Assembly (NCBI GenBank): GCA_977030845.1
Contig: OZ365115.1
Coordinates: forward strand, 10,478,001-10,542,000
Length of the DNA stretch: 64,000 nucleotides
Source of the DNA: Fimbriosthenelais zetlandica
Taxonomy: Eukaryota
Reading direction: 5' to 3'
Part shown: in pieces, positions 1-57,721 of the stretch
How positions within the stretch are numbered: the first letter of the stretch is position 1
Layout: every line of letters starts with the position of its first letter
The notes under the pieces: model-generated
What the model was told of the DNA's origin: nothing
What the model saw: the letters and a program-made list of their open reading frames with translations, nothing else
The model's database searches: none
Translations under genes and position numbers: made by a program

Positions 1-378
1 ACGACATACTAACATGTTTGCGTGATAGGGCCAGGTCAGGGATTGTACATTGGGCAATGATTGTAGGTCAATAGTTGCTGATGCAGCACGTAAGTCCTTA
101 GAACCTCCCATAGCTGTTCAGAACATAAACTTCATACGTGTGTGTATACATGCTTCTACTTCATAGCTACAAATATACACATACCTTTAATGCTAATTCA
201 TTCGTCAAAAATATATTCTATGCGACTGATCTCAGTTTGTGTACACTAATCTTTCAAGATCTTTCAATGTGAGCAAGTCCAGTGTCGTATTTATTCCATT
301 CATTTGGTCATCAGCCAACATTCAACTGGAATTCTCCCGTACAGAGTATTACTTGATTTGTTCTTACACTTCTGAAAC

Positions 379-818
379 TTAATTCTGTCCTTGGTGTGGC
401 TGTTCCTGCCGCTGTTCTCCATTTGGCTGTTCCTGTTGGATGTTTAAATTATTGTTTTTAGAGTCCTGATCTACTTGTTGAGGTACATGTACCTGTTCAA
501 CTACTTGCTGTGGTACTTCCGGATGTTGTGGTACTTCCGGATGTTGTGGTACTTCTTGTTGTTGCTCCACAGGTTGTTGTGCATTCTCCACAATTTGGTG
601 AACATTTTTCACAAGTTGTTGTACATTCTCCACATGACTGGGAACTGGTTCACGTGCTGGTGGTTGCACCTCTTGTTGCTGTTGTTGTTGATCTTGTTGC
701 TGTTGGGGAATATCTACTTGTTGTTGGTTCATTTGGACAACTTGCTCTTGTTGGTGGTCCGCCGCTACTGGCACTGGTTGTTCTACTTGCTCTTGTTGAT
801 ACTGTTGTTGTTGCTCCC
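379..818 (-). CDS. NUCB2: Nucleobindin terminal exon B, Q/E/V/P-rich tail (146 codons including stop)
   Basis: Acceptor ttttaattctaaatAG at 820-819. Phase 1 start (GG GAG CAA), in frame with ORF 379..774, TAA at 381-379. AATAAA lies at 295-290 on the minus strand. Confidence 0.75.
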
Positions 819-3800
819 CTATTTAGAATTAAAAAAGCCATACTTGAGTACCATCCAAAACATCAATTTCGACATCAAAACTATGTGAGTGGCTATGAAA
901 GCGTTTGTTTTCAAGATGCTATGCAATTGTGATTTCTCAAGCGCGAATTTATGATTACAGAATTAATTTGCCTATATACATGCTAGTACTATTGGTTATT
1001 TTGTGTTGTCATCTGTAAGATAAACTTAAATACCTAGTGTAAGGTGCATGACAGTGGTGGACCCTTAGAACTTATTTCAATAAAACAAAGGATCTAGAAA
1101 CTTAAAATCTACAAAATAAAGTATACAGACAATCATTTTGCAAATCAAATACTCTTTATATAATTTGCAAATGAATGCTAACCCCTGGAAATGAATTCAG
1201 AGAGATATATGAAAAGGACAAATATAACTGGAAAATATAACTGGAAAATAATGTGCATCCAAGTTCCTAGTGTAACGTTAATGAAACACGTGTCCCTGAA
1301 ACCGAGTCTTGGGCATGTTTTTCAAAACTCTTCCTTTCCAATGCTTACAGGTAAATTATAGATTAATCGTCTATAAAATTTAGTTAAATGTACTCAACAA
1401 TTTTGTTAGAGGATGGGAACTGAAACACTTACAAAAAGTATGAACCAAATTAGTCTTCAGGGAAACTTTGCAATTTGAACAATTTGAGAAGGTGTAAATT
1501 CCTAACCTGAATACACACAACAATTATTATTTTAATTCAAATATTTTGTAGAAATTAGAACAATAGCCTAAACGTGTCCATATGATACCTCAAATACTTC
1601 TTATTCAGTAATTGAAACACCATGCAAATTTACCAAATCATTTCTTCTTTTCTTGTCTTCTGTCTTAAGCATGGTGGCCTTGGTTTCCAGTGGCGGGTGA
1701 ATCAGGATGGGCAGCTTTATTAGGGGACTGAGTGCCACCCGTACCAACAGCCACAGGTGCCTGAGGTTGTGCCTGTTGTTGCATCTGTTGCTGTTCCCCA
1801 ACAGAGTTTGTCTGGACTTGTTGTGGCTGTTGTTGTTTAATGTCATTAACATTTGGCTTATTCATAACTGGATCCACATTAGGTTGATTCTGCCCTGTGT
1901 GCACTTGGCCATGCATCTGTTGTTGCTGGGCATGTGGCACTGGCTGTTGCTGTTGTTGCACCTGCTGTTGCATCTGCTGTACCTGTCCTTGGTCCTGACG
2001 TTGTTGCCTCATTCCAGCATGGGGGTGTACGAAGCCAGGACCACCTGCTTGCTGTTGTTGCTGAGGCACTTGGTATACAGGCTGCTGTTGGTACTGTAGG
2101 TTCTGATTAGGCTGTTGGAACTGTGGCTGTTGGTGTTGGTATGGTGGTTGTTGAGGGTGCTGTTGATATTGGGGCTGCTGGAACTGTGGCTGTGGTGGTT
2201 GCTGTTGGTAGGGTGGTTGACCCTGGTATTGCTTGGGTCTATGCATCATGGCTGGATGGACTCCTCCTATATAGTTGGTATATATTACATCGTATAAAAC
2301 CAACATAGGTACCAGCGTGTATCAATATTTATACTGTGATAATAGTGCTGACAAGGAACTACATATTTCTGTCAACATCTGCAAATGGTGTAACATTCTG
2401 AGGTAAATTCTCACAAGGTCGAAATATATCTTGTCCTAGGAGAACAAAATAGTTCAAACAGTTGATTCCAGTAATTAATGATTAATAATTCCAGTAAAAT
2501 TATCTGATCTGAGTTAGAGATATGCCCATTTGCAAATGTTTAAAGATGGACACAGAAAGGATGCATGCGGTTATTTGGGCATGCAGGTCTATCTATAAAT
2601 GTGGAATCTATAGGAGAGGTGGAACAAAATGTTAAAATGTTATCAAATATACGCAGCATAAATTCAGTATTGACATTTGACTTAAAGCCTTTCGGACTGG
2701 ACACACACTAGATACATTTTGGACAGCAATTAACATTTATTGACAATTCATTGGATTAGTATCTTAGACTAGAAGCGAAACAATCAAACAGTCAACCCAT
2801 TATTGGGGTTTATGCCTTGGTCAATGCAATCGTCCCTGGTTCATTGCGTCTTATCGCGAAAATATTATAAAATGCCCAATAACAGAATCAATACGTAGCT
2901 GCTAAACATATTATGTCAAACACAAAATTGTAATCAGCCTTTCTGTTTTGAAACAATAAACACTTTGGCCCAATGTAAATGCATAGAAAACAATTGAATG
3001 GATGTCAGTCTTGTAAAGAAATGAGTAATGTGTAAACTAAAAGAAAGTGTCTTTCAATCCGAAAATGAACGATAACCCAAAATGTGAGGTAAAAAAGTTA
3101 TACAAGCGGGATAAAATGCACCAACCACCACTACTACTAGGTAAATATGGGTAGGAAAACAATAATAAACAATTGGGCACCATCGATAATAACACAAAAA
3201 TCGTTAACTATAGCATGACTATTACCTATATCATCAAGTTATATTACTTCCAAAAGTACATACATGTACTGATAAAATTTTTATTGAAACGTGCATACCA
3301 ATTAGAAATAGTTATACTTCTGTAGGTTGGTAAGTGACTTTACTGTTCAACAATTCGAAAACATGATTAGAAACTTAACCAATTGTTAGCTCCACTTACC
3401 TTGAGCCTAGTTAAAAAAGACAGAAAGATTGAACAGTTTAGAAATGTTATTCCTGCAAGGAATACATGCACTAAATCATGCATGGCAACACCAGAAATGA
3501 ACAAAGATGAAAAGAAATAGTTTAAACTCTTGCTTAATCATCAAGCTCTCATGTGAAACATTATTATTGAGTGTGAGCATAGAATTATCGCTTGTTGAGA
3601 GGCATAAATAAGGTGATTAACATTACGAAATACATTATCTATAAAATATTCACGCAGCAATTATTTCTGATTAGAATTTCATGAAGAGAACAAAGGAAAC
3701 TCAGTTGCAAAAATTTGAAGTACAATTAAAGCAAAAAAAGTAAGATATTCGGATAGGTACAAGACATTCAAGAAATAACATTCAGTTCTACACTACAATA

Positions 3801-6800
3801 TATAGCAAAAGAATCTAATACTGAAGCATAGAAGGTTAAGTTTGTGTAAGCTGTGATAGGTCCATATGTACATACTGCCCAGGCTGGTTGAGATATAAAG
3901 GATATGGTAATATATACCTGAATAGGTTGTGGTACGTTTGGAGGTTGGTTACCACCATCCACGGGCGGGATATAAGAGGGTTGGGGCACCTGGTGGCATG
4001 CAGAAAATTTACAATTTAACCTTCCGTGCAACTAGTTACAACAGATTTCTGCTGGAAAGAATAGCTCGATTAAATAATATTTTTCAGAAAACAATGAGGG
4101 TGGGTAGGCTGAATTCTGAGTCAAACGTGGATGAAAACGGATCATCTCAAAAATCCAAAAGGCATTCCTTCAACGTCTGGTTTTGGGTTATTTTTTGAAT
4201 GCTTACTTTAGGCTTTCCATTTTTTTTCTTGTGAATTCTCCCCCTTTTCTTGAACCTTTTCTTCATGCCCTGCATCCCATTTTTGAGAAAAAGATACATC
4301 ATATTTCCGCTACATTGGACGTAACAATCTACTAAGCACAGACAACATAATAGACTTTCTGGCAAGAACTACAGCCAACATAATAGCCAATTGGCAAATA
4401 GAATTAACACGTACTGCGTTACAATATTTAACGGGTTATATTAATATTTGAAAATCTTTCCTTCTCATTGAAAAGAAATATTCTTTTGAGTTAAGAAAGG
4501 CAGAGCTTTATACGTTGTGCGGGATTCTACATGACAAAGCGAGTCAAGACAACTTTTCCCCGACACCCGATCTTTACGTACCCATGCACTAGTTGGGTGG
4601 GAATCAGTCGATCAGGAGTTTAGAGTAAAATGAAGAGTACTCACGTTTATTTCTCCAGGCTGAGCGTGTTCATATTCATAATTCTGTCGCCTCCTCTCTT
4701 CATAATCCCTCTCAAATTGTGCTAACTCCTCGTCTGTGAATAACTCCTGTTCATCCAAGCCCTGAGGACAAAAGTTTTAAAGATATTTTAAATATTTCTT
4801 GACAAAATATCTTAGTGTGAAGGGCCGCAGAATTTCATAAAACTTGGAATCAAAGTGTGTCATTTTCAGAATTCTCCAAAATCTAGATTGTGGTATAGTT
4901 TTGATGGGTTGAGGAATAACACAAACACGTACCTTCCAGCCTTCGTCCTTCTCAAATTCATCACTCTTGGTGCTATCCATGAACTCCTGGAGGGAGATGT
5001 ATGAATCACCATTCTTGTCCACCTCCTTCATCACATGCTCCCTCATACGGTTCATCTCCTCATACCTCTCCATCATATCGTCCTCAGGTGCATTAGGGTC
5101 ATATACTTTATCCAGCTAAAACAAGCCAAATGAACTTTGTTTAAATGTCCAATAATAGTAATGACCATAACTTGGCCATATATATTAACAAACTCGGTTG
5201 GGTATTCACAGCCAGCTATCTCATTAACCGCTGAAATATCTTCTATACAAATACATTTAAATAAAATTAAAACAGATTAACAATCACCCAGGGACAGACA
5301 TACCTCTTTTTGGAATAACGCTTCTACTTCTACGGGGTCCAATACGCCATCTCCATTGGTATCTAAACGAGAGGGAATAAAATTATCTTCATGAGTAAAG
5401 CTATTGCAAATCAGGAGAACAAGTCGAACAGAAGGGTACAATTCATTTACCATGAAGACTGAAGAAAGTCTTGGGATCAAAATCATCCTTGTCAAGGCCG
5501 TCAGTTTCTTCCCACACTTCTTCCAGTTGGTCCTTGCTACCCTGAAAACATGAAAATGCCAGATGTAGAATACATTAAAAAAAATAGAAAGTTAAAGGTA
5601 GATTTGACAGAATATAGAATTATTTGATTAAGCTAATTGGTGGGGGCGGGATGTGAAATGGTTACTAACAGGGTGGTGCAGTTTTGGGTGGTCCTTGTGT
5701 TTTTGTTTTTCTTCCTCCCACTTGTGCTCTGCTTCCTTCCTGTGGGGCTCGTCCATTCCTGCCATTTGTTGCTTGTGTAGAACCTCCTTCTCCAACTCAT
5801 AGCGCTTAAACTCCTGCTTCCTCTGTACATCTATCTTCTCCAGGTCATCTGACGCCTGTGGGATATCATAGAAAGATTGCAACATTCATGTACAGAAATG
5901 GAAGTAAGATCTTTCTTTGAGGAAATAATCATTAATCCACAAACAGGAATGAGTAGATAGTCATGGAAGAGTTACCTGTTTTAAAAGTTTTGATAAATCA
6001 TCTACTTCGAAAGTATGAGGGTTGGAATGATCGAGATGCGCCACGAGACGATTGGCATCAGGGATATCTTTTAAAGGAATTCCTGTAAAGAAAGGATAAA
6101 AAAAATCTAACAAACTGTTGCTATAATTAATTGCATAACATTTTTTGGCGAGAAAATCGTCAAAATGAACAACAAAAACTTATGTTTCAAATACAATAGC
6201 TTAAATGGAAATAGTAATTTTCTATTAAGATACAGGAAACATAATTGTATAATGTGCACAATAGGCAGCATTAAAGTGCTATGATCTTACTGTGGTAGAG
6301 CAACAACATGCCAAAAATCTTCTTTGGCAAAAGCAAGCACATGGAATTCTTCAAACAGGATTAAGACAGTAAATTCACACCATAGTGAGGAAATGTGATC
6401 AAAATATGAATACATGGGGAGTAGACGGATTCTAATTTTAAGGTTATGCAATTGCTGAATGTTATATCTAGATGCAAAATTTCTATAAGTGATTAAGTGC
6501 AATGGGTATACTTTAGTCATTGTTTTTGGCAGTCTGGTTTTACTTAGATATCACAATTGTAGTGAGATCTATTAACTCAAGTGAACATGCAGAAATGTTC
6601 TAAATTTTAAGCGAAGTACTTGTCACACGAACTCAGATTATAAAGGCAGTAATCATCTTAAATTTTAAATACTCTATCACCTCAGGAATCAAAAATACAA
6701 ACGCAAACAAAGACAAAGAAAATAGACAGAGGAGATAACACCGTCCAATTACTGAAGCAGAATTATTAACGAAAAAAGATCCCACTTCGATGCCTTAGTA

Positions 6801-9800
6801 ACAAAGGGTAAATTATAATATTTACAATATTCATTCATCCAAATAGTCACCCATCTATGCTGGCATGTATTAATATACCTCATCCCAATATATATCTCAT
6901 TTATAAGATGCTCACGTATAATAGTGCTCATTTTTGCATCTCAGTCAACAGCTTGCAGTATTGAATGCATTCTTACACGTAATTATAGTATTCACTATGA
7001 AAGCATATCAGACATCACTAACACAATAGTGGTAAATCCCAACCTTTTCTCCATGCCTTTTTTGAGGGATCCTTCACGGCTGCCATGGAAAATGAAAACA
7101 ATTCAAATGGAACATGCCGATATACAAAAGTATTACAGGTCACCCAACTCCATTTACAATATCACGTATAATTGGAGATCACTTTCATTATAAAATGACC
7201 TGACAACTGATTTTGCTAACAAAATATGGCAAACTCAGATATGTTTTTGTGTTAAGTGATAGGTTCCAGTCTGTAAATGGGTCAGATTTGCTGGGGGTGG
7301 GGAAACAATGGGTTTCGTCACTGTAATCTGATTAGAGATGATAAGAGATCTCAGCTTCTCAGATTCCTCTGTACCCATGGGGCGTTAAAAGTCTGATCTA
7401 GTGAGAGGTTCCCCTGGTTTTAACTTGCAGTTCAAAAAGGCCTAAAACCAAGGGATAAATGTGTTAAGTATATCAATAATGGAGACACACTCACTCCAAT
7501 AAAATTATAAACTCGAAACATGCTATTAGTAATATTCAGACATATTTCAGTCTCTTTTGAGTCATGTAACACAAAAACGAAAGAGAAATATATTTTGAAA
7601 ATACAATTTGTTACAGTCCATTACGCAGATGGCTTCAGTAGATAGAAAAGTGAAAAAAAATCAGGAGGAGGAACAAAATTCCTGTAGGAAATATCAAAGC
7701 CAAAAATTTATCTGGATTCACGATGCTTAAACTTGGAAAACAATATTACTCCGTACCAAGATTGGATCCAGAATTCCAAACAGATTCAGTATGGAAATTA
7801 ATATTTAGTGAATTAGGTGCTTATATACAAAATTAAGCACCCTTTCATCCTAAAACGCCGAGCAGAAATCTACAGGAGCAACGTGGTTAAAGCTAAATGG
7901 GTGGGGGATATTACTACCTTCATTATGCGACCCATCTGCGTCTGAGAAAATAAATCATGGAAGGAAATGAAAATAATCTACGTAAAAAATATCTAACTGA
8001 AAATGAAGTTCAGGAAAATTTGAAAAGATTTCATTTTCATATTTGGGTTTTCCTGTTGACTGAAGATTGAAGGGGAGAGGGAAACCAACCTTTAAATTCC
8101 TGTATAATTTCTTCTAAATGATGCCCCATTTATCAATGAAAGTGGTGATTTATATTATGATAGAATCTTATTGTTCTCTGTTTTTTACTGTTACAAGATG
8201 TTGGGCTAAATTGCTATAAGTTGGAAAATTGTGTGTATGTTTTATTTAAAAGCCTAATGGTTTTTATAATCACCTTGTTGTCTCTTCATATTGATCCGCT
8301 GGATCTGACGGAGACGATCCAGTTCCTGCCTCTTTAACTCATCCAGTTTGGTTCGAATATTATGCGAGACTAGCTCTAGATGACGAGCAATATCACCACT
8401 CTGAAAACAAAATACACTCCTATTATTTTCTCGGCAGACATTAATTCCATTGGCAGAGATTAGAGGGCAGGGTTTCAATGAATTAATTTCCATGGAGTAC
8501 CAAACGAGAAATTGGAAAGCGAAGATTGATTTCATGCAAGTATTTTGGATCATATGGAAGGGAGAACACTAACCTAAACTCAAAACACAATAGGATTCAT
8601 ACATGAGATGATATATTTTCAGAGCAACGCATGTATATATTTCTCATGAGAACTTTCATTGAATTAAACCTTGAATTAAAATGGATCTTGCATCGCATCG
8701 CTCGGAATGAAAATACATTGTAATTAACTTAAAGTTTCTGATTTTTTTTTTAGTAACCACTTTCTTTTTCTAAGAAAATCAGAGTGCACAAGTATAAATT
8801 TGTTCAAGAATGGATTCATCGTAATGCGGTGCAAATATTGTATGTGTTGCGTACCACAATGTTGCAGGAAGATTGATGCATGTGTCTATGAAAAGGATGC
8901 CAACATAGATCCTATCTCAACTCAGTTTGAGTTATTCTAGAGATTTATACCAAGAGTGTTTCTGTTCCAATATTAGTCTGTTTTCTACAAGATCTCAACG
9001 CATATAGAAAGTAATATAAGAAAGTAAGAATCATGATAGAAAGTGCAATTATTCAGTACTACAGCTTCATGCCCTATTCCCCTTATAGACAGAACATAAC
9101 TCAAACAACATGCAATGTAATAGACAGGGTAATTTGAGGTTGAAGAAAGATTTCAACATGGAACATTCATATGAATTACATACAGTGGATACAGCTTTTA
9201 TTTCACGAAGTCATAAGTGCTCATTCATTACCAGATCAATTCATTTTTAGCTCATTTATATTTTGCTACGTATTGAATTAGACCAAACTTTCTATCTATG
9301 CCGAAATCTTATGATGAAACAAAACGGGTCTTAAGTAAAGGGCCTGAAAAACCAATCAATTAATCAATAACAAATATTTGAACCGATTTAAACTAAAATA
9401 TGTAATACTTTTCCATATGAGGCTAAAGCCTAAAACATATAACTCCAAACATAATAAAATAGAAATGAAAGGTCAAGCTTTCTTCGGGAGCTTCTAAATT
9501 TACCAACATCTTCATCTATGTACTCTTTCATCTATTGGCGATGAAAAGAATGCACACCATTTCCGAGTACCAGTACTTACTTTTTCCTGTAAAGTCTGAA
9601 GACACGAACATTCCATTAAAACTTAGCTTCACAGTAAGAAATACAGATATCAATCAACTTCACAGGGATTATTGATGGAGAGAAAAGATAAAATAAACAC
9701 AATTTAATGTCTAAATCACATAGGGATTCCAATATGGAGGTAGAGACTAACATACTTGGTTATAGACATACAAAGTTGCAGGCAAAGGACAATAGGAAAC

Positions 9801-10758
9801 CTAACAATCAGGATATGGGATACCGAGAAGCTACCAATAATAAATTGTATATTACATAGACCAGTTTCAATGTCAGACACATAAGAGACAATGAAGAGGA
9901 AGGAACACAAGATGAATACAAGATGAAATGTGATGTAACGGTCTCTATAACAAAGACACGTCATTCTTAACTGGCTAAACTCTAGAACATAATGAAATTA
10001 AGGGGGAAATCCCAAAAGAGCAAAATAAATTGAATGAGATCACTAGCTGGGAATGTATTCCAACAAAATTTCCTTCCCGAAGAGAAATTACTTGAGAAAA
10101 CATCCTTCGCTTCCTGTTATTATTATTATTTAAAATAAACTTCATAATGCTTAGCATTCGTAATATCGTATATCAAAGTAGGATGTTTTTCTAGATATGA
10201 AATTCTAATAAGACTATATATGTGATATTTCTGAAATAGGACACCTGGGTATAAATCTTGACTAAATAAAACATTCAATCCTCGTCACTGATAGTGTCCA
10301 CCAATCCACAAAATAAATATTGAAAACAAACAGTGTCTGGAGTGAGTCAAATCCTCAGTTACTATGGCAACCAGTAATCCCACCTCCAAGTAAGTAATAT
10401 CCAGTCGAGACTTACCTTTATATCTGTGATATTTGACTCTTCAAGTTTTTTCTTAAATTCCTCATCTGTCTCAAGGATGGTCACTACTTCTTTGAGATAC
10501 CGCTCATATTCCAGACCAAAATTCTGTCAAAAAGTAGAATTATTATATAATTACAAAGTGTATAATAGGGGTTCAATATTTTTTAGGAAAATCTGAGAAA
10601 AAATATCAAAAGCTAAAATGACTGAGAAGACTTACTATATCTTCAGAGGCTTCCACTTGAGGATCATCTTTCTTTTCTTCTTTTTTCACCTTTACTGGGG
10701 GACAGACAATACTGCTAATGACGACCGCCAATACGGCCATTAACAAAACCCACTTCAT
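379..10758 (-). CDS. NUCB2: Nucleobindin (NUCB1/NUCB2 family, Golgi/secreted EF-hand Ca2+-binding protein), spliced; 593 aa with terminal exon A or 539 aa with terminal exon B
   Basis: Exons, all GT-AG with matching phases: 10758-10636 ([19 protein letters not shown] signal peptide), 10523-10416 ([27 protein letters not shown]), 8400-8274 ([16 protein letters not shown]), 6082-5976 ([15 protein letters not shown]), 5855-5670, 5541-5451 ([27 protein letters not shown]), 5362-5304 (EF-hand [12 protein letters not shown]), 5115-4933 (EF-hand [12 protein letters not shown]), 4761-4645, 3989-3918, 3406-3400, then 2266-1665 or 818-379. The motifs match nucleobindin as I know the family. Invertebrates usually have one NUCB1/2 co-orthologue, so the symbol is approximate. 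Confidence 0.95.
509..555. repeat. 18-bp coding tandem repeat, ~2.6 copies (PQHPEV)
   Basis: TGTGGTACTTCCGGATGT at 509-526 and 527-544, partial copy at 545-555. Confidence 0.9.
1665..2266 (-). CDS. NUCB2: Nucleobindin terminal exon A, Q/P/H/Y/G-rich low-complexity tail (~200 aa, 70 Gln counted)
   Basis: Acceptor aactatatAG at 2268-2267 (a NAGNAG alternative lies 3 nt further). Phase 1, open to TAA at 1667-1665. ATTAAA variant at 1536-1531. Confidence 0.8.
3400..3406 (-). CDS. NUCB2: 7-nt microexon GCTCAAG (A-Q-G), phase 0 to phase 1
   Basis: Minus strand reads tctttctgtcttttttaacTAG|GCTCAAG|GTAAGT: strong pyrimidine tract and perfect donor. It supplies exactly the phase change needed between the upstream phase-0 exons and both Q-rich exons. 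Confidence 0.8.
3918..3989 (-). CDS. NUCB2: 72-nt symmetric (0/0) exon [24 protein letters not shown]
   Basis: ttttctgcatgccacCAG| acceptor and CAG|GTATAT donor; open frame with Pro/Gln composition like the tail. Confidence 0.7.
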
Positions 10759-11209
10759 GATGAAATCTGCAAAAGAAATAATTAACGTTACATAATCATG
10801 CATGTCACTATAATCAAATAATGACTAAATTATAAATTTTAATAATTAGCCTAAATCTATGCCTATGGAGCTTTTGTATTGATGTCTATATTCTTTGATT
10901 AAAAAATCGTTATAATATATACCATTATATCTACTATTTATATTACATCTACTATTTATATTACAATTTAATCACTGACAGCAAGTGATGTGGCACTGCA
11001 ATGCCAATGCCATTGATGACTGAGAATGAGTGAGACTGAACACAGTCACACTCAGTAGGCCTAGTGAAAGAGGGATGGTCTGGACCATCCCATTCCCACT
11101 CTACCCGGCATCAGCTGTTTTCTACGCAGCCACTTAAAATAAAATGTTGTGGGCCTCAATATGTAATCTTTAACTACATTCGATTAATACTGCACGGAAA
11201 TTTACCTAC

Positions 11210-11627
11210 CTTATGTCCCCGATCGCTTTTATTCCAGAGAAAGCTGTCATACAAGTCTCCCTTCACGGGCACCTGCGATGGGTATACGTGTGCGTGGCCT
11301 ATTTCACTTGTGTCGCGAGCTCTGATTGGCCAAATTTCTAGCGACCAAAATATCTATTTACATTGTTATGTCATTACAGAATCTTAAATACAGATCTGGT
11401 AAGTCACAAAAATCTCATGAACTATTGGACAAAAGACAATTTTGTTATCTCCAAAGTATTTTATCCATGGAAAATGAAAATGGTTTTGTTGACGTGGTGA
11501 AATTGACCAATGCAAATGCAGGACACATCCCGCATGATAGCCCGGCCCACTTTGGGCAACAACAAACATGGCGGCGCCCTAGGTTCGCCATCGTCAAAGT
11601 TTTCGACGAGGAAATGTATTTAAAATG
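11210..11627. promoter_or_regulatory. Bidirectional promoter and divergent non-coding first exons of NUCB (-) and PIK3C2A (+)
   Basis: Minus-strand donor AAG|GTAGGT at 11210/11209 pairs with the acceptor before the NUCB ATG exon (10767). Plus-strand donor ATG|GTAAGT at 11627/11628 pairs with the acceptor at 12317. Between them: TCGCGA palindrome 11313-11318, CCAAT boxes 11324-11329 (reverse) and 11507-11511, YY1-type AAACATGGCGGC 11564-11575 and reverse CGCCAT 11586-11591. Confidence 0.7.
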
Positions 11628-12377
11628 GTAAGTTATTCAGTTTTCTACCAGGTTTTGATATCATAATTAGCCTCCCAGTGAGCTACAGGACATTTTAAAT
11701 ATTGCTTTTGTTGCTAATGGGCTTGACTAAAGGGGATAAATCAGTGATGTTGTTTGACAGCTCCAGAAACATTCGTCCTGGGAGGTGGAGTTTTTTTGTG
11801 ATGGGATGGAGATACCAAAAGGCGGCGTTTCCTGTTCAGTGTGATCAATACAGTGAGGATATTTGGGTGACCCGTTCGCAGAAGCATTAATTTCGTATAA
11901 ATTTTGCCAAATGTGTTTGGTAAAGCCGTATGTCCCAGCCCTAGGCACATGAGGTTCCTCCTCCACTGTTCAGTATTGGCACTGGCACTAGTAATATTGT
12001 CACTGTGTATTGCCTATAGTATTGGCCTCCAGGAATTTAGGTCTATTTATCTATCATTTAAGGCCTACCAGGCTTCTTTCCAGGTGATCATACCATACCT
12101 TTGACTTTGTTTAATAGTGTATCCATGATGTAGGCTTCCAAAGACAATTTGTCTGTAACCTCCCTCATACCAACACAGGTCTGTTATTGTTAAGTCCCAG
12201 ACCAGCCCTAGATATACACTGACAACTCATGACAGATGTTAGTGTAGGCATGTTTAGCCCTGAATGATCATCTTTAAGTTAACCCTGATTAAAGCTAATC
12301 TTGTTTAATATCCACAGGTCATGGAGAGTTAATCAGATTACCCAGTGATCAGTGAAGGCTCACATCAAGGATCAACC

Positions 12378-57721
<45,344 letters not shown>

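What the first reader, a model, noticed from the sequence alone, without database searches (positions are those of the whole stretch)
3400..3406. 7-nt microexon acting as a potential frame switch for the polyQ tail
Seen: upstream exons end in phase 0 while both Q-rich exons start in phase 1. A 7-nt exon GCTCAAG, with a strong pyrimidine tract and GTAAGT donor, bridges the gap exactly. If it is skipped, exon A reads EESIQP* and exon B reads [11 protein letters not shown], giving a ~397-402 aa protein close to the vertebrate nucleobindin length with no Q tail. Inference: because the stops fall in last exons, these forms may escape junction-dependent NMD, so one tiny exon could toggle the whole low-complexity domain on or off. 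Annotation pipelines usually miss such exons.
Basis: partly seen in the sequence, partly recalled or inferred. Interest (0 to 1): 0.72.

Follow-up and report, generated by a model that had tools for sequence, protein, structure and literature searches.

The report
Seven-base exon keeps nucleobindin tail in frame
A 7-base exon with textbook splice signals is very probably real and needed to keep the glutamine-rich tail of an invertebrate nucleobindin gene in frame, but no RNA data could be reached, and nothing suggests it works as an on/off switch.

Summary
On the minus strand lies a single-copy nucleobindin (NUCB) gene. I rebuilt ten upstream exons; the last three end in phase 0. Both glutamine-rich exons (A 2266-1665, B 818-379) are open only if one base is carried in.

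The site ttttttaacTAG|GCTCAAG|GTAAGT at 3406-3400 supplies that base. It gives 593 aa (A) or 539 aa (B).

The site is unlikely to be chance:
- It is the only site of its quality in 246 kb-strands of this genome.
- It ranks first of 96 possible bridging exons.
- It lies in unique sequence.
- The first usable AGs of both tail exons need the phase it supplies.
- The nearest relative's mRNA reads from the proline-rich piece into the Q tail in one frame.

I put about 0.8 on a real exon, most likely always included. Its splice sites are stronger than its neighbours', its length is not a multiple of three, and it lacks the UGC motif of regulated microexons.

The switch idea is untested, about 0.1. 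No RNA run was listed, so no junction read was seen. Mytilus, Haliotis and a third relative have an unsplit phase-0 tail exon, so the microexon is lineage-specific.

This is an ordinary kind of feature, mainly of annotation value.

The parts
3400..3406 (-). Candidate 7-nt microexon GCTCAAG. It encodes Ala-Gln plus the first base of a Gly codon and shifts phase 0 to phase 1.
   Evidence: Ranks first of 96 open bridging exons. Only site of its quality in 246 kb-strands.
3407..3426 (-). 3' splice site of the upstream intron: pyrimidine tract tttctgtcttttttaac (14/17 Y) followed by TAG.
   Evidence: Stronger than most verified acceptors of the same gene.
3394..3399 (-). 5' splice site GTAAGT. With the exon end it reads AAG|GTAAGT, 9/9 consensus.
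   Evidence: Equals the best donor of the gene (exon 2, AAG|GTAAGT, 9/9).
3918..3989 (-). 72-nt exon [24 protein letters not shown], phase 0 to phase 0.
   Evidence: Aligns with ...EVN-IPAQ...PPEVPQPVQ of transcript P0285 and EVH-VPIDPSAAPP of P0314.
4645..4761 (-). Exon [39 protein letters not shown]. It ends in phase 0 at an intron position shared with Mytilus and Haliotis.
4933..10758 (-). Conserved NUCB core. Exons 10758-10636, 10523-10416, 8400-8274, 6082-5976, 5855-5670, 5541-5451, 5362-5304 and 5115-4933 carry the signal peptide, the NUCB1_N-like region and the EF-hands.
   Evidence: 65% identity to P0285 over the core.
1665..2266 (-). Q-rich exon A. It is open for 199 codons only when entered with one carried base. 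Stop TAA at 1667-1665, ATTAAA at 1536.
379..818 (-). Q-rich exon B. It is open for 145 codons when entered with one carried base. An in-frame stop lies just upstream at 825-823. Stop TAA at 381-379, AATAAA at 295.
   Evidence: Tail similarity to P0285.

Best explanation
The 7 bases at 3406-3400 are a genuine internal exon of a single-copy nucleobindin gene.

Intron 1 (3917-3407, 511 nt) and intron 2 (3399-2267 to tail A, or on to 819 for tail B) are removed separately. This leaves GCTCAAG between the 72-nt proline-rich exon and the glutamine-rich tail exon. The exon adds Ala-Gln and one base. That moves the reading frame from phase 0 to phase 1, the only phase in which both tail exons are open.

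Its splice signals are at consensus and stronger than those it competes with, so I expect it in essentially all mature mRNAs. That makes it a constitutive, frame-keeping microexon.

Shown: the anatomy, the phases, the rarity of such a site and its rank among alternatives. Inferred: that it is actually spliced in, and that inclusion is constitutive.
For: - The gene model and phases were rebuilt and reproduce 593/539 aa with the exon and 397/402 aa without it.
- The site is unique at its stringency in 246 kb-strands of this genome.
- It ranks first of 55 bridging exons in the 3917-2267 intron and first of 96 between 4644 and 2267. The runners-up have donors of at most 6/9.
- The first four AGs of exon A (2266, 2263, 2260, 2251) and the first viable AG of exon B (818) all need one carried base.
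- Alternative phase-1 donors score at most 5/9.
- The region is unique in the 447-Mb genome, so it is not a repeat artefact.
- The nearest relative's transcript P0285 reads PPEVPQPVQ-HQQQQDIPQQQQ in one frame, so the P-rich piece and the Q tail are continuous in an mRNA.
- Q-rich tails are general in protostome NUCBs.
- Literature: microexons of 15 nt or less are often missed, and missing ones that are not multiples of three gives frameshifted, truncated models. Constitutive microexons have stronger splice sites (PMC8831610).
Against: - No RNA evidence: the look-up of sequencing runs listed no run, so read laying could not be used.
- Junction patterns were not found in the metagenome collection.
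- The exon is absent from three other genomes examined (Mytilus L009, Haliotis L008, metagenomic relative L010). There the tail is one terminal exon in phase 0. Conservation therefore gives no support, and the origin of two introns 7 nt apart is unexplained.
- Phase-0 acceptors do exist inside the tails: 813 GAG|C in B, and 2231 and 2222 in A.
- The thresholds for the chance estimate were chosen after seeing the site.
Confidence: 0.7

Rival explanations
1. The microexon is real but alternatively spliced. Skipping it yields tail-less 397/402-aa nucleobindins with a function of their own.
For: - Skipping gives short, clean stops within 7-12 codons.
- A 396-aa NUCB without a Q tail exists as a transcript-derived protein in a relative, P0314.
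- Seven-base exons are intrinsically hard for the spliceosome to recognise (PMC8831610).
Against: - The exon's own sites are stronger than the sites that would pair if it were skipped.
- Its length is not a multiple of three, whereas regulated animal microexons are usually in frame (PMC8831610).
- No UGC lies between the pyrimidine tract and the AG, a motif present in 74-79% of SRRM3/4-dependent microexons. Strong core signals give regulator-independent inclusion (10.1101/2024.09.17.613571).
- P0314's short end is a different sequence, not a frameshifted tail.
- No expression data.
Confidence: 0.1
2. There is no microexon. The phase-0 donor at 3918 (or 4645) joins phase-0 acceptors inside the tail exons directly: 813 in B, 2231 or 2222 in A. 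The 7-mer is then a chance splice-site look-alike.
For: - Such acceptors exist. Position 813 lies only 5 nt after the first AG and would read PQPIQ|QQQQYQQ, close to P0285's PQPVQ-HQQQQ.
- In Mytilus, Haliotis and L010 the tail is entered in phase 0.
Against: - 813 is a GAG acceptor just behind a TAG.
- 2231 and 2222 are the sixth and seventh AGs after the tract and have poor pyrimidine content (0.53 and 0.41).
- A perfect-consensus 7-nt exon of the right length class is expected fewer than 0.01 times by chance.
Confidence: 0.12
3. The frame is bridged by another element: a weaker exon, a non-canonical splice site or an alternative donor. One example is 4641 (GTGA|GTACTC), which adds 4 nt.
For: 96 open candidates of the right length class exist between 4644 and 2267. 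The 4641 donor would give the right phase.
Against: All score far below the candidate. Their donors are 3-6 of 9 and none has a comparable acceptor.
Confidence: 0.05

Closest known systems
Constitutively spliced small microexons (<=15 nt) that annotations miss, as catalogued in plants (PMC8831610)
   Same: Tiny internal coding exon with strong splice signals and a length not a multiple of three. Omitting it gives a frameshifted, truncated model with a long false 3' UTR.
   Different: That catalogue is for plants and rests on junction reads and deep conservation. Here the host is an invertebrate animal, there are no reads, and three other genomes lack the exon.
SRRM3/4 (eMIC)-dependent neural microexon programme of bilaterians (PMC8797185; 10.1101/2024.09.17.613571)
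   Same: Very short exon in an animal gene.
   Different: Those exons are mostly multiples of three, have weak core 3' splice sites and usually carry a UGC between the branch point and the AG. This one is 7 nt, has consensus sites and has no such UGC.
Nucleobindin / CALNUC genes of protostomes with Q-rich C-terminal tails (for example Mizuhopecten P0264, Mytilus P0277, Haliotis P0332)
   Same: Signal peptide, NUCB1_N region, EF-hand pair and leucine-zipper-like segment ending in HAQPG, followed by a Q/P-rich tail. The phase-0 intron after HAQPG is shared.
   Different: In those genomes the tail is one terminal exon in phase 0. Here it is split into 72 nt + 7 nt + a tail exon, with two alternative Q-rich tail exons.
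Recursive splice sites / recursive exons (AG|GTAAGT ratchet points)
   Same: A strong acceptor closely followed by a consensus GTAAGT inside an intron.
   Different: Seven bases lie between them. After the first splice the junction would read CAG|GCTCAA, which is not a donor, so the exon cannot be removed recursively (read from the sequence).

Membership tests
Nucleobindin (NUCB/CALNUC) gene | EF-hand pair and NUCB1-like N-terminal region | tested here: met
   On the single 48-aa exon tested, Pfam EF-hand_1 scored E 1.1e-5, just under its cut-off (25.1 vs 25.4 bits), and NUCB1_N matched weakly. The exon hits 119 proteins at E<=1e-10, among them named nucleobindins. The core is 52-65% identical to named or transcript NUCBs.
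Nucleobindin (NUCB/CALNUC) gene | N-terminal signal peptide and full-length collinearity with NUCB proteins | tested here: met
   The model begins [22 protein letters not shown] and aligns over residues 1-589 with scallop P0264.
Constitutive frame-keeping microexon | Canonical AG...GT flanks with strong acceptor and donor | tested here: met
   Pyrimidine tract 14/17, TAG|G, AAG|GTAAGT 9/9.
Constitutive frame-keeping microexon | Needed to keep the downstream ORF open | tested here: met
   With it the protein is 593 or 539 aa. Without it, stops follow after 6 or 11 codons.
Constitutive frame-keeping microexon | Junction-spanning RNA reads, high inclusion | not testable with these tools
   No run was listed, so read laying was unusable.
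Constitutive frame-keeping microexon | Conservation of the exon in related genomes | tested here: not met
   Mytilus, Haliotis and relative L010 have an unsplit phase-0 tail exon. No close relative's genome was reachable, so this speaks only to deep conservation.
SRRM3/4-regulated (eMIC) microexon | Length a multiple of three, preserving the frame on skipping | tested here: not met
   7 nt. Skipping shifts the frame.
SRRM3/4-regulated (eMIC) microexon | UGC motif between branch point / pyrimidine tract and AG | tested here: not met
   The only TGC in the 60 nt upstream lies about 50 nt from the AG. Motif definition from 10.1101/2024.09.17.613571.
SRRM3/4-regulated (eMIC) microexon | Tissue-restricted inclusion | not testable with these tools
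   No RNA data.
Recursive splice site | Acceptor directly abutting a donor, so that a 5' splice site is regenerated after the first step | tested here: not met
   Seven bases intervene, and the regenerated junction would be CAG|GCTCAA.

The most novel reading that the evidence does not exclude
The 7-nt exon is a regulated frame switch. Tissue- or stage-specific skipping would turn a long nucleobindin with a prion-like glutamine-rich tail into a compact, vertebrate-sized protein. Combined with the choice between two tail exons, one tiny exon would then control a whole low-complexity domain.
Probability: 0.1. Interest if true: 0.6.

Novelty: new member of a known kind. Interest (0 to 1): 0.3.

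Why it matters
If real, the exon decides whether gene models of this nucleobindin carry their 140-200-residue glutamine-rich tail. A pipeline that misses it will report a truncated 397/402-aa protein with a false long 3' UTR.

It is also a clean example of a lineage-specific, frame-shifting microexon. It lies inside what is a single terminal exon in Mytilus, Haliotis and a third relative, which makes it useful for studying how tiny exons arise.

The kind of feature is well known, so the value is mainly for annotation and as an example.

Tried and rejected
- RNA evidence: the look-up of sequencing runs failed four times as busy. It then listed no run for 300-5100 (rna) or for 1600-2266 (any), so read laying could not be used.
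- Spliced-junction patterns: none was found in metagenome contigs, either for the 3918 end followed by 0-30 nt and the exon A start, or for the 3' end of the 72-nt exon alone.
- Protein search with exon A's translation: no hit. The other two searches returned only distant NUCBs, at most 65% identical in the core, and neither the window's own protein nor a close relative's.
- Retrocopy or paralogue in the own genome that would preserve the spliced junction: none. The gene is single-copy.
- Repeat origin of the site: rejected, because the 221-nt surround and the whole 1651-nt interval are unique in the genome.
- Rfam families in 1-12000: none. No relevant repeats or hairpins around the exon.
- Conservation: the TARA and Logan contigs for P0001 and P0007 are too short. 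L010, Mytilus and Haliotis have a different, unsplit tail.
- Exon A as a cassette: I considered splicing from a donor at 1745 (TTG|GTACGG) to B. It is in frame (522 nt) but scores only 5/9, so I left it open.

Full report
**What is there**

The window's first 11 kb carry a nucleobindin (NUCB/CALNUC) gene on the minus strand. I rebuilt it exon by exon from the sequence and checked the model by translation.
- The exons are 10758-10636, 10523-10416, 8400-8274, 6082-5976, 5855-5670, 5541-5451, 5362-5304, 5115-4933, 4761-4645 and 3989-3918.
- All have AG/GT borders and together give one open frame. It runs from [13 protein letters not shown]... through the EF-hand region (Pfam EF-hand and NUCB1_N matches on the exon tested) to ...[32 protein letters not shown].
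- The core is 65% identical to a transcript-derived marine NUCB (P0285) and 52-57% identical to bivalve NUCBs.
- The gene is single-copy in a 447-Mb, 79-contig genome.

**Checking the observation**

- The last three upstream exons all begin and end in phase 0.
- Two long glutamine-rich open frames follow: A (2266-1665, 199 codons) and B (818-379, 145 codons). Each is open only when one base is carried in from upstream.
- At 3406-3400 the minus strand reads tttctgtcttttttaacTAG|GCTCAAG|GTAAGT.
- Including these seven bases gives ...[24 protein letters not shown]... (593 aa) with A, and ...[18 protein letters not shown]... (539 aa) with B.
- Leaving them out gives EESIQP* (397 aa) and [11 protein letters not shown] (402 aa).

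**Is it more than chance?**

I scanned the window plus 59 kb from elsewhere in the same genome, both strands (246 kb-strands). The criteria were a pyrimidine tract of at least 0.7, YAG, an exon of up to 10 nt, and GTAAGT.
- The only hit is this site. That puts the chance expectation at no more than 0.007 per 1651-nt intron, before the one-in-three length-class requirement. The thresholds were set after seeing the site, so I read this as p of roughly 0.01, not as an exact value.
- I then listed every open AG...GT exon of length 1 mod 3 between the secure donor at 4645 and exon A. There are 96 of them. The 7-mer ranks first by a wide margin: donor 9/9 and tract 0.82, against at most 6/9 for the rest.
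- Its donor equals the best donor of the gene, and its acceptor beats most of the verified ones.
- The surrounding 221 nt and the whole 1651-nt interval are unique in the genome, so the motif is not carried by a repeat.

**Do the tails really need phase 1?**

- For exon A, the first four AGs after the tract (2266, 2263, 2260, 2251) all need one carried base. The first phase-0 acceptors are the sixth and seventh AGs (2231 AAG, 2222 CAG) and have poor pyrimidine content.
- For exon B, the frame has a stop at 825-823. The first viable AG is therefore 818, which needs one carried base. A GAG five bases further on (813) would be phase 0.
- Alternative donors that would give phase 1 are weak, at 3-5 of 9.
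- Both tails thus share the phase that the microexon delivers.

**Are the tails coding?**

- Q/P-rich C-terminal tails are general in protostome NUCBs.
- In the nearest relative's transcript (P0285, contig L019), PPEVPQPVQ runs straight into HQQQQDIPQQQQ... in one frame. This aligns with the window's [17 protein letters not shown]...DIPQQQQ of tail B.
- The proline-rich 72-nt exon and a Q tail therefore belong to one reading frame in a real mRNA of a relative. In this genome they can only be joined by a one-base shift.

**What could not be shown**

- No public run was listed for this DNA, either as RNA or as any kind (after four busy failures). No junction read was seen.
- Junction patterns were absent from the metagenome collection.
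- The protein searches returned neither the window's own protein nor a close relative's.
- Conservation gives no support at depth. In Mytilus galloprovincialis (L009), Haliotis asinina (L008) and a metagenomic relative (L010), the intron after the HAQPG-type exon is phase 0. The whole tail is a single terminal exon entered in phase 0.
- The split 72 nt + 7 nt + tail is therefore lineage-specific. How two introns came to lie seven bases apart is unexplained.

**Mechanism**

The most likely reading is a constitutive, frame-keeping microexon. The two flanking introns, 511 nt and 1133 nt to tail A (longer to B), would each be recognised on their own. This is my inference, from general knowledge that short introns favour intron definition.

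The strong acceptor and the perfect U1-complementary donor outcompete the pairing that skipping would need, which is a 7/9 donor with an acceptor of tract 0.47 or 0.65.

The literature fits this reading:
- Microexons of 15 nt or less are often missed by annotation.
- When their length is not a multiple of three, the result is a truncated, frameshifted model.
- Constitutive microexons have stronger splice sites, and regulated animal microexons are usually in frame (PMC8831610).
- SRRM3/4-dependent microexons mostly carry a UGC between the branch point and the AG. Strengthening the core signals makes inclusion independent of the regulator (10.1101/2024.09.17.613571).
- Here no UGC lies within about 50 nt of the AG.

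**The switch idea**

The switch reading is logically sound but unsupported.
- The claim that the short forms escape NMD rests on the vertebrate exon-junction rule. From general knowledge, many invertebrates sense long 3' UTRs instead.
- If exon A were spliced on to B, the stop in A would lie upstream of a junction. A weak in-frame donor exists at 1745, which would make A a 522-nt exon.
- A 396-aa tail-less NUCB exists in one relative (P0314). Its ending is a different sequence, not a frameshifted tail.

**Verdict**

- About 0.8 that the exon is real: roughly 0.7 constitutive and 0.1 regulated switch.
- About 0.12 that the tails are entered directly at weak phase-0 acceptors.
- About 0.05 for some other bridge.

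The kind of feature is known, so this is a new member of a known kind. Its value lies mainly in annotation and in showing a recently arisen microexon. I tested only the phases, acceptors and poly(A) signals of those exons.

Noticed in passing
window 1745 (minus strand), exon A 2266-1745: A weak donor TTG|GTACGG (5/9) lies inside exon A. It would make A a 522-nt (3n) cassette that joins exon B in frame (...[16 protein letters not shown]...). A and B may therefore not be strictly alternative terminal exons.
   Followed up: partly
window 1721, 1536, 295, 191 (minus strand): Poly(A) signals. An AATAAA at 1721 lies about 50 nt upstream of exon A's stop codon. The first signal after that stop is ATTAAA at 1536. 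Exon B has AATAAA at 295, about 85 nt after its stop.
   Followed up: partly
L009 19213-19341 and from 19622 (Mytilus); L008 about 27913-27985 and from 28244 (Haliotis): In both molluscs the NUCB tail is one terminal exon entered in phase 0, directly after the HAQPG exon. The intron position is shared with the window's 4645 donor.
   Followed up: yes
P0314 (Logan transcript, 396 aa): A relative's NUCB ends ...HAQPGEVH-VPIDPSAAPPKPADHLNPEKHAPEVQKMEHVESKDHH with no Q-rich tail. This is either a tail-less species or a short isoform.
   Followed up: no
L019 (P0285 transcript), last ~30 codons: The Q-rich tail of the nearest relative ends in an unrelated stretch, MRYLTYHWMQSHKLPPLHSQSPRVIFRH. This could be a different terminal exon or an assembly or frame problem in that contig.
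   Followed up: no
window 12345-14093 (+): A 582-aa Ser/Pro-rich open frame lies in a GC-rich block (GC 0.50 against about 0.37 around it), head-to-head with NUCB. It is the start of the neighbouring gene that another first-stage note calls PIK3C2A.
   Followed up: no
window 3456 region (minus strand): A second acceptor-like site, ccttgcAG|GAATAA, lies 50 nt upstream of the microexon acceptor. An exon starting there would meet a stop at once (GAA TAA), so it cannot serve the coding frame.
   Followed up: partly
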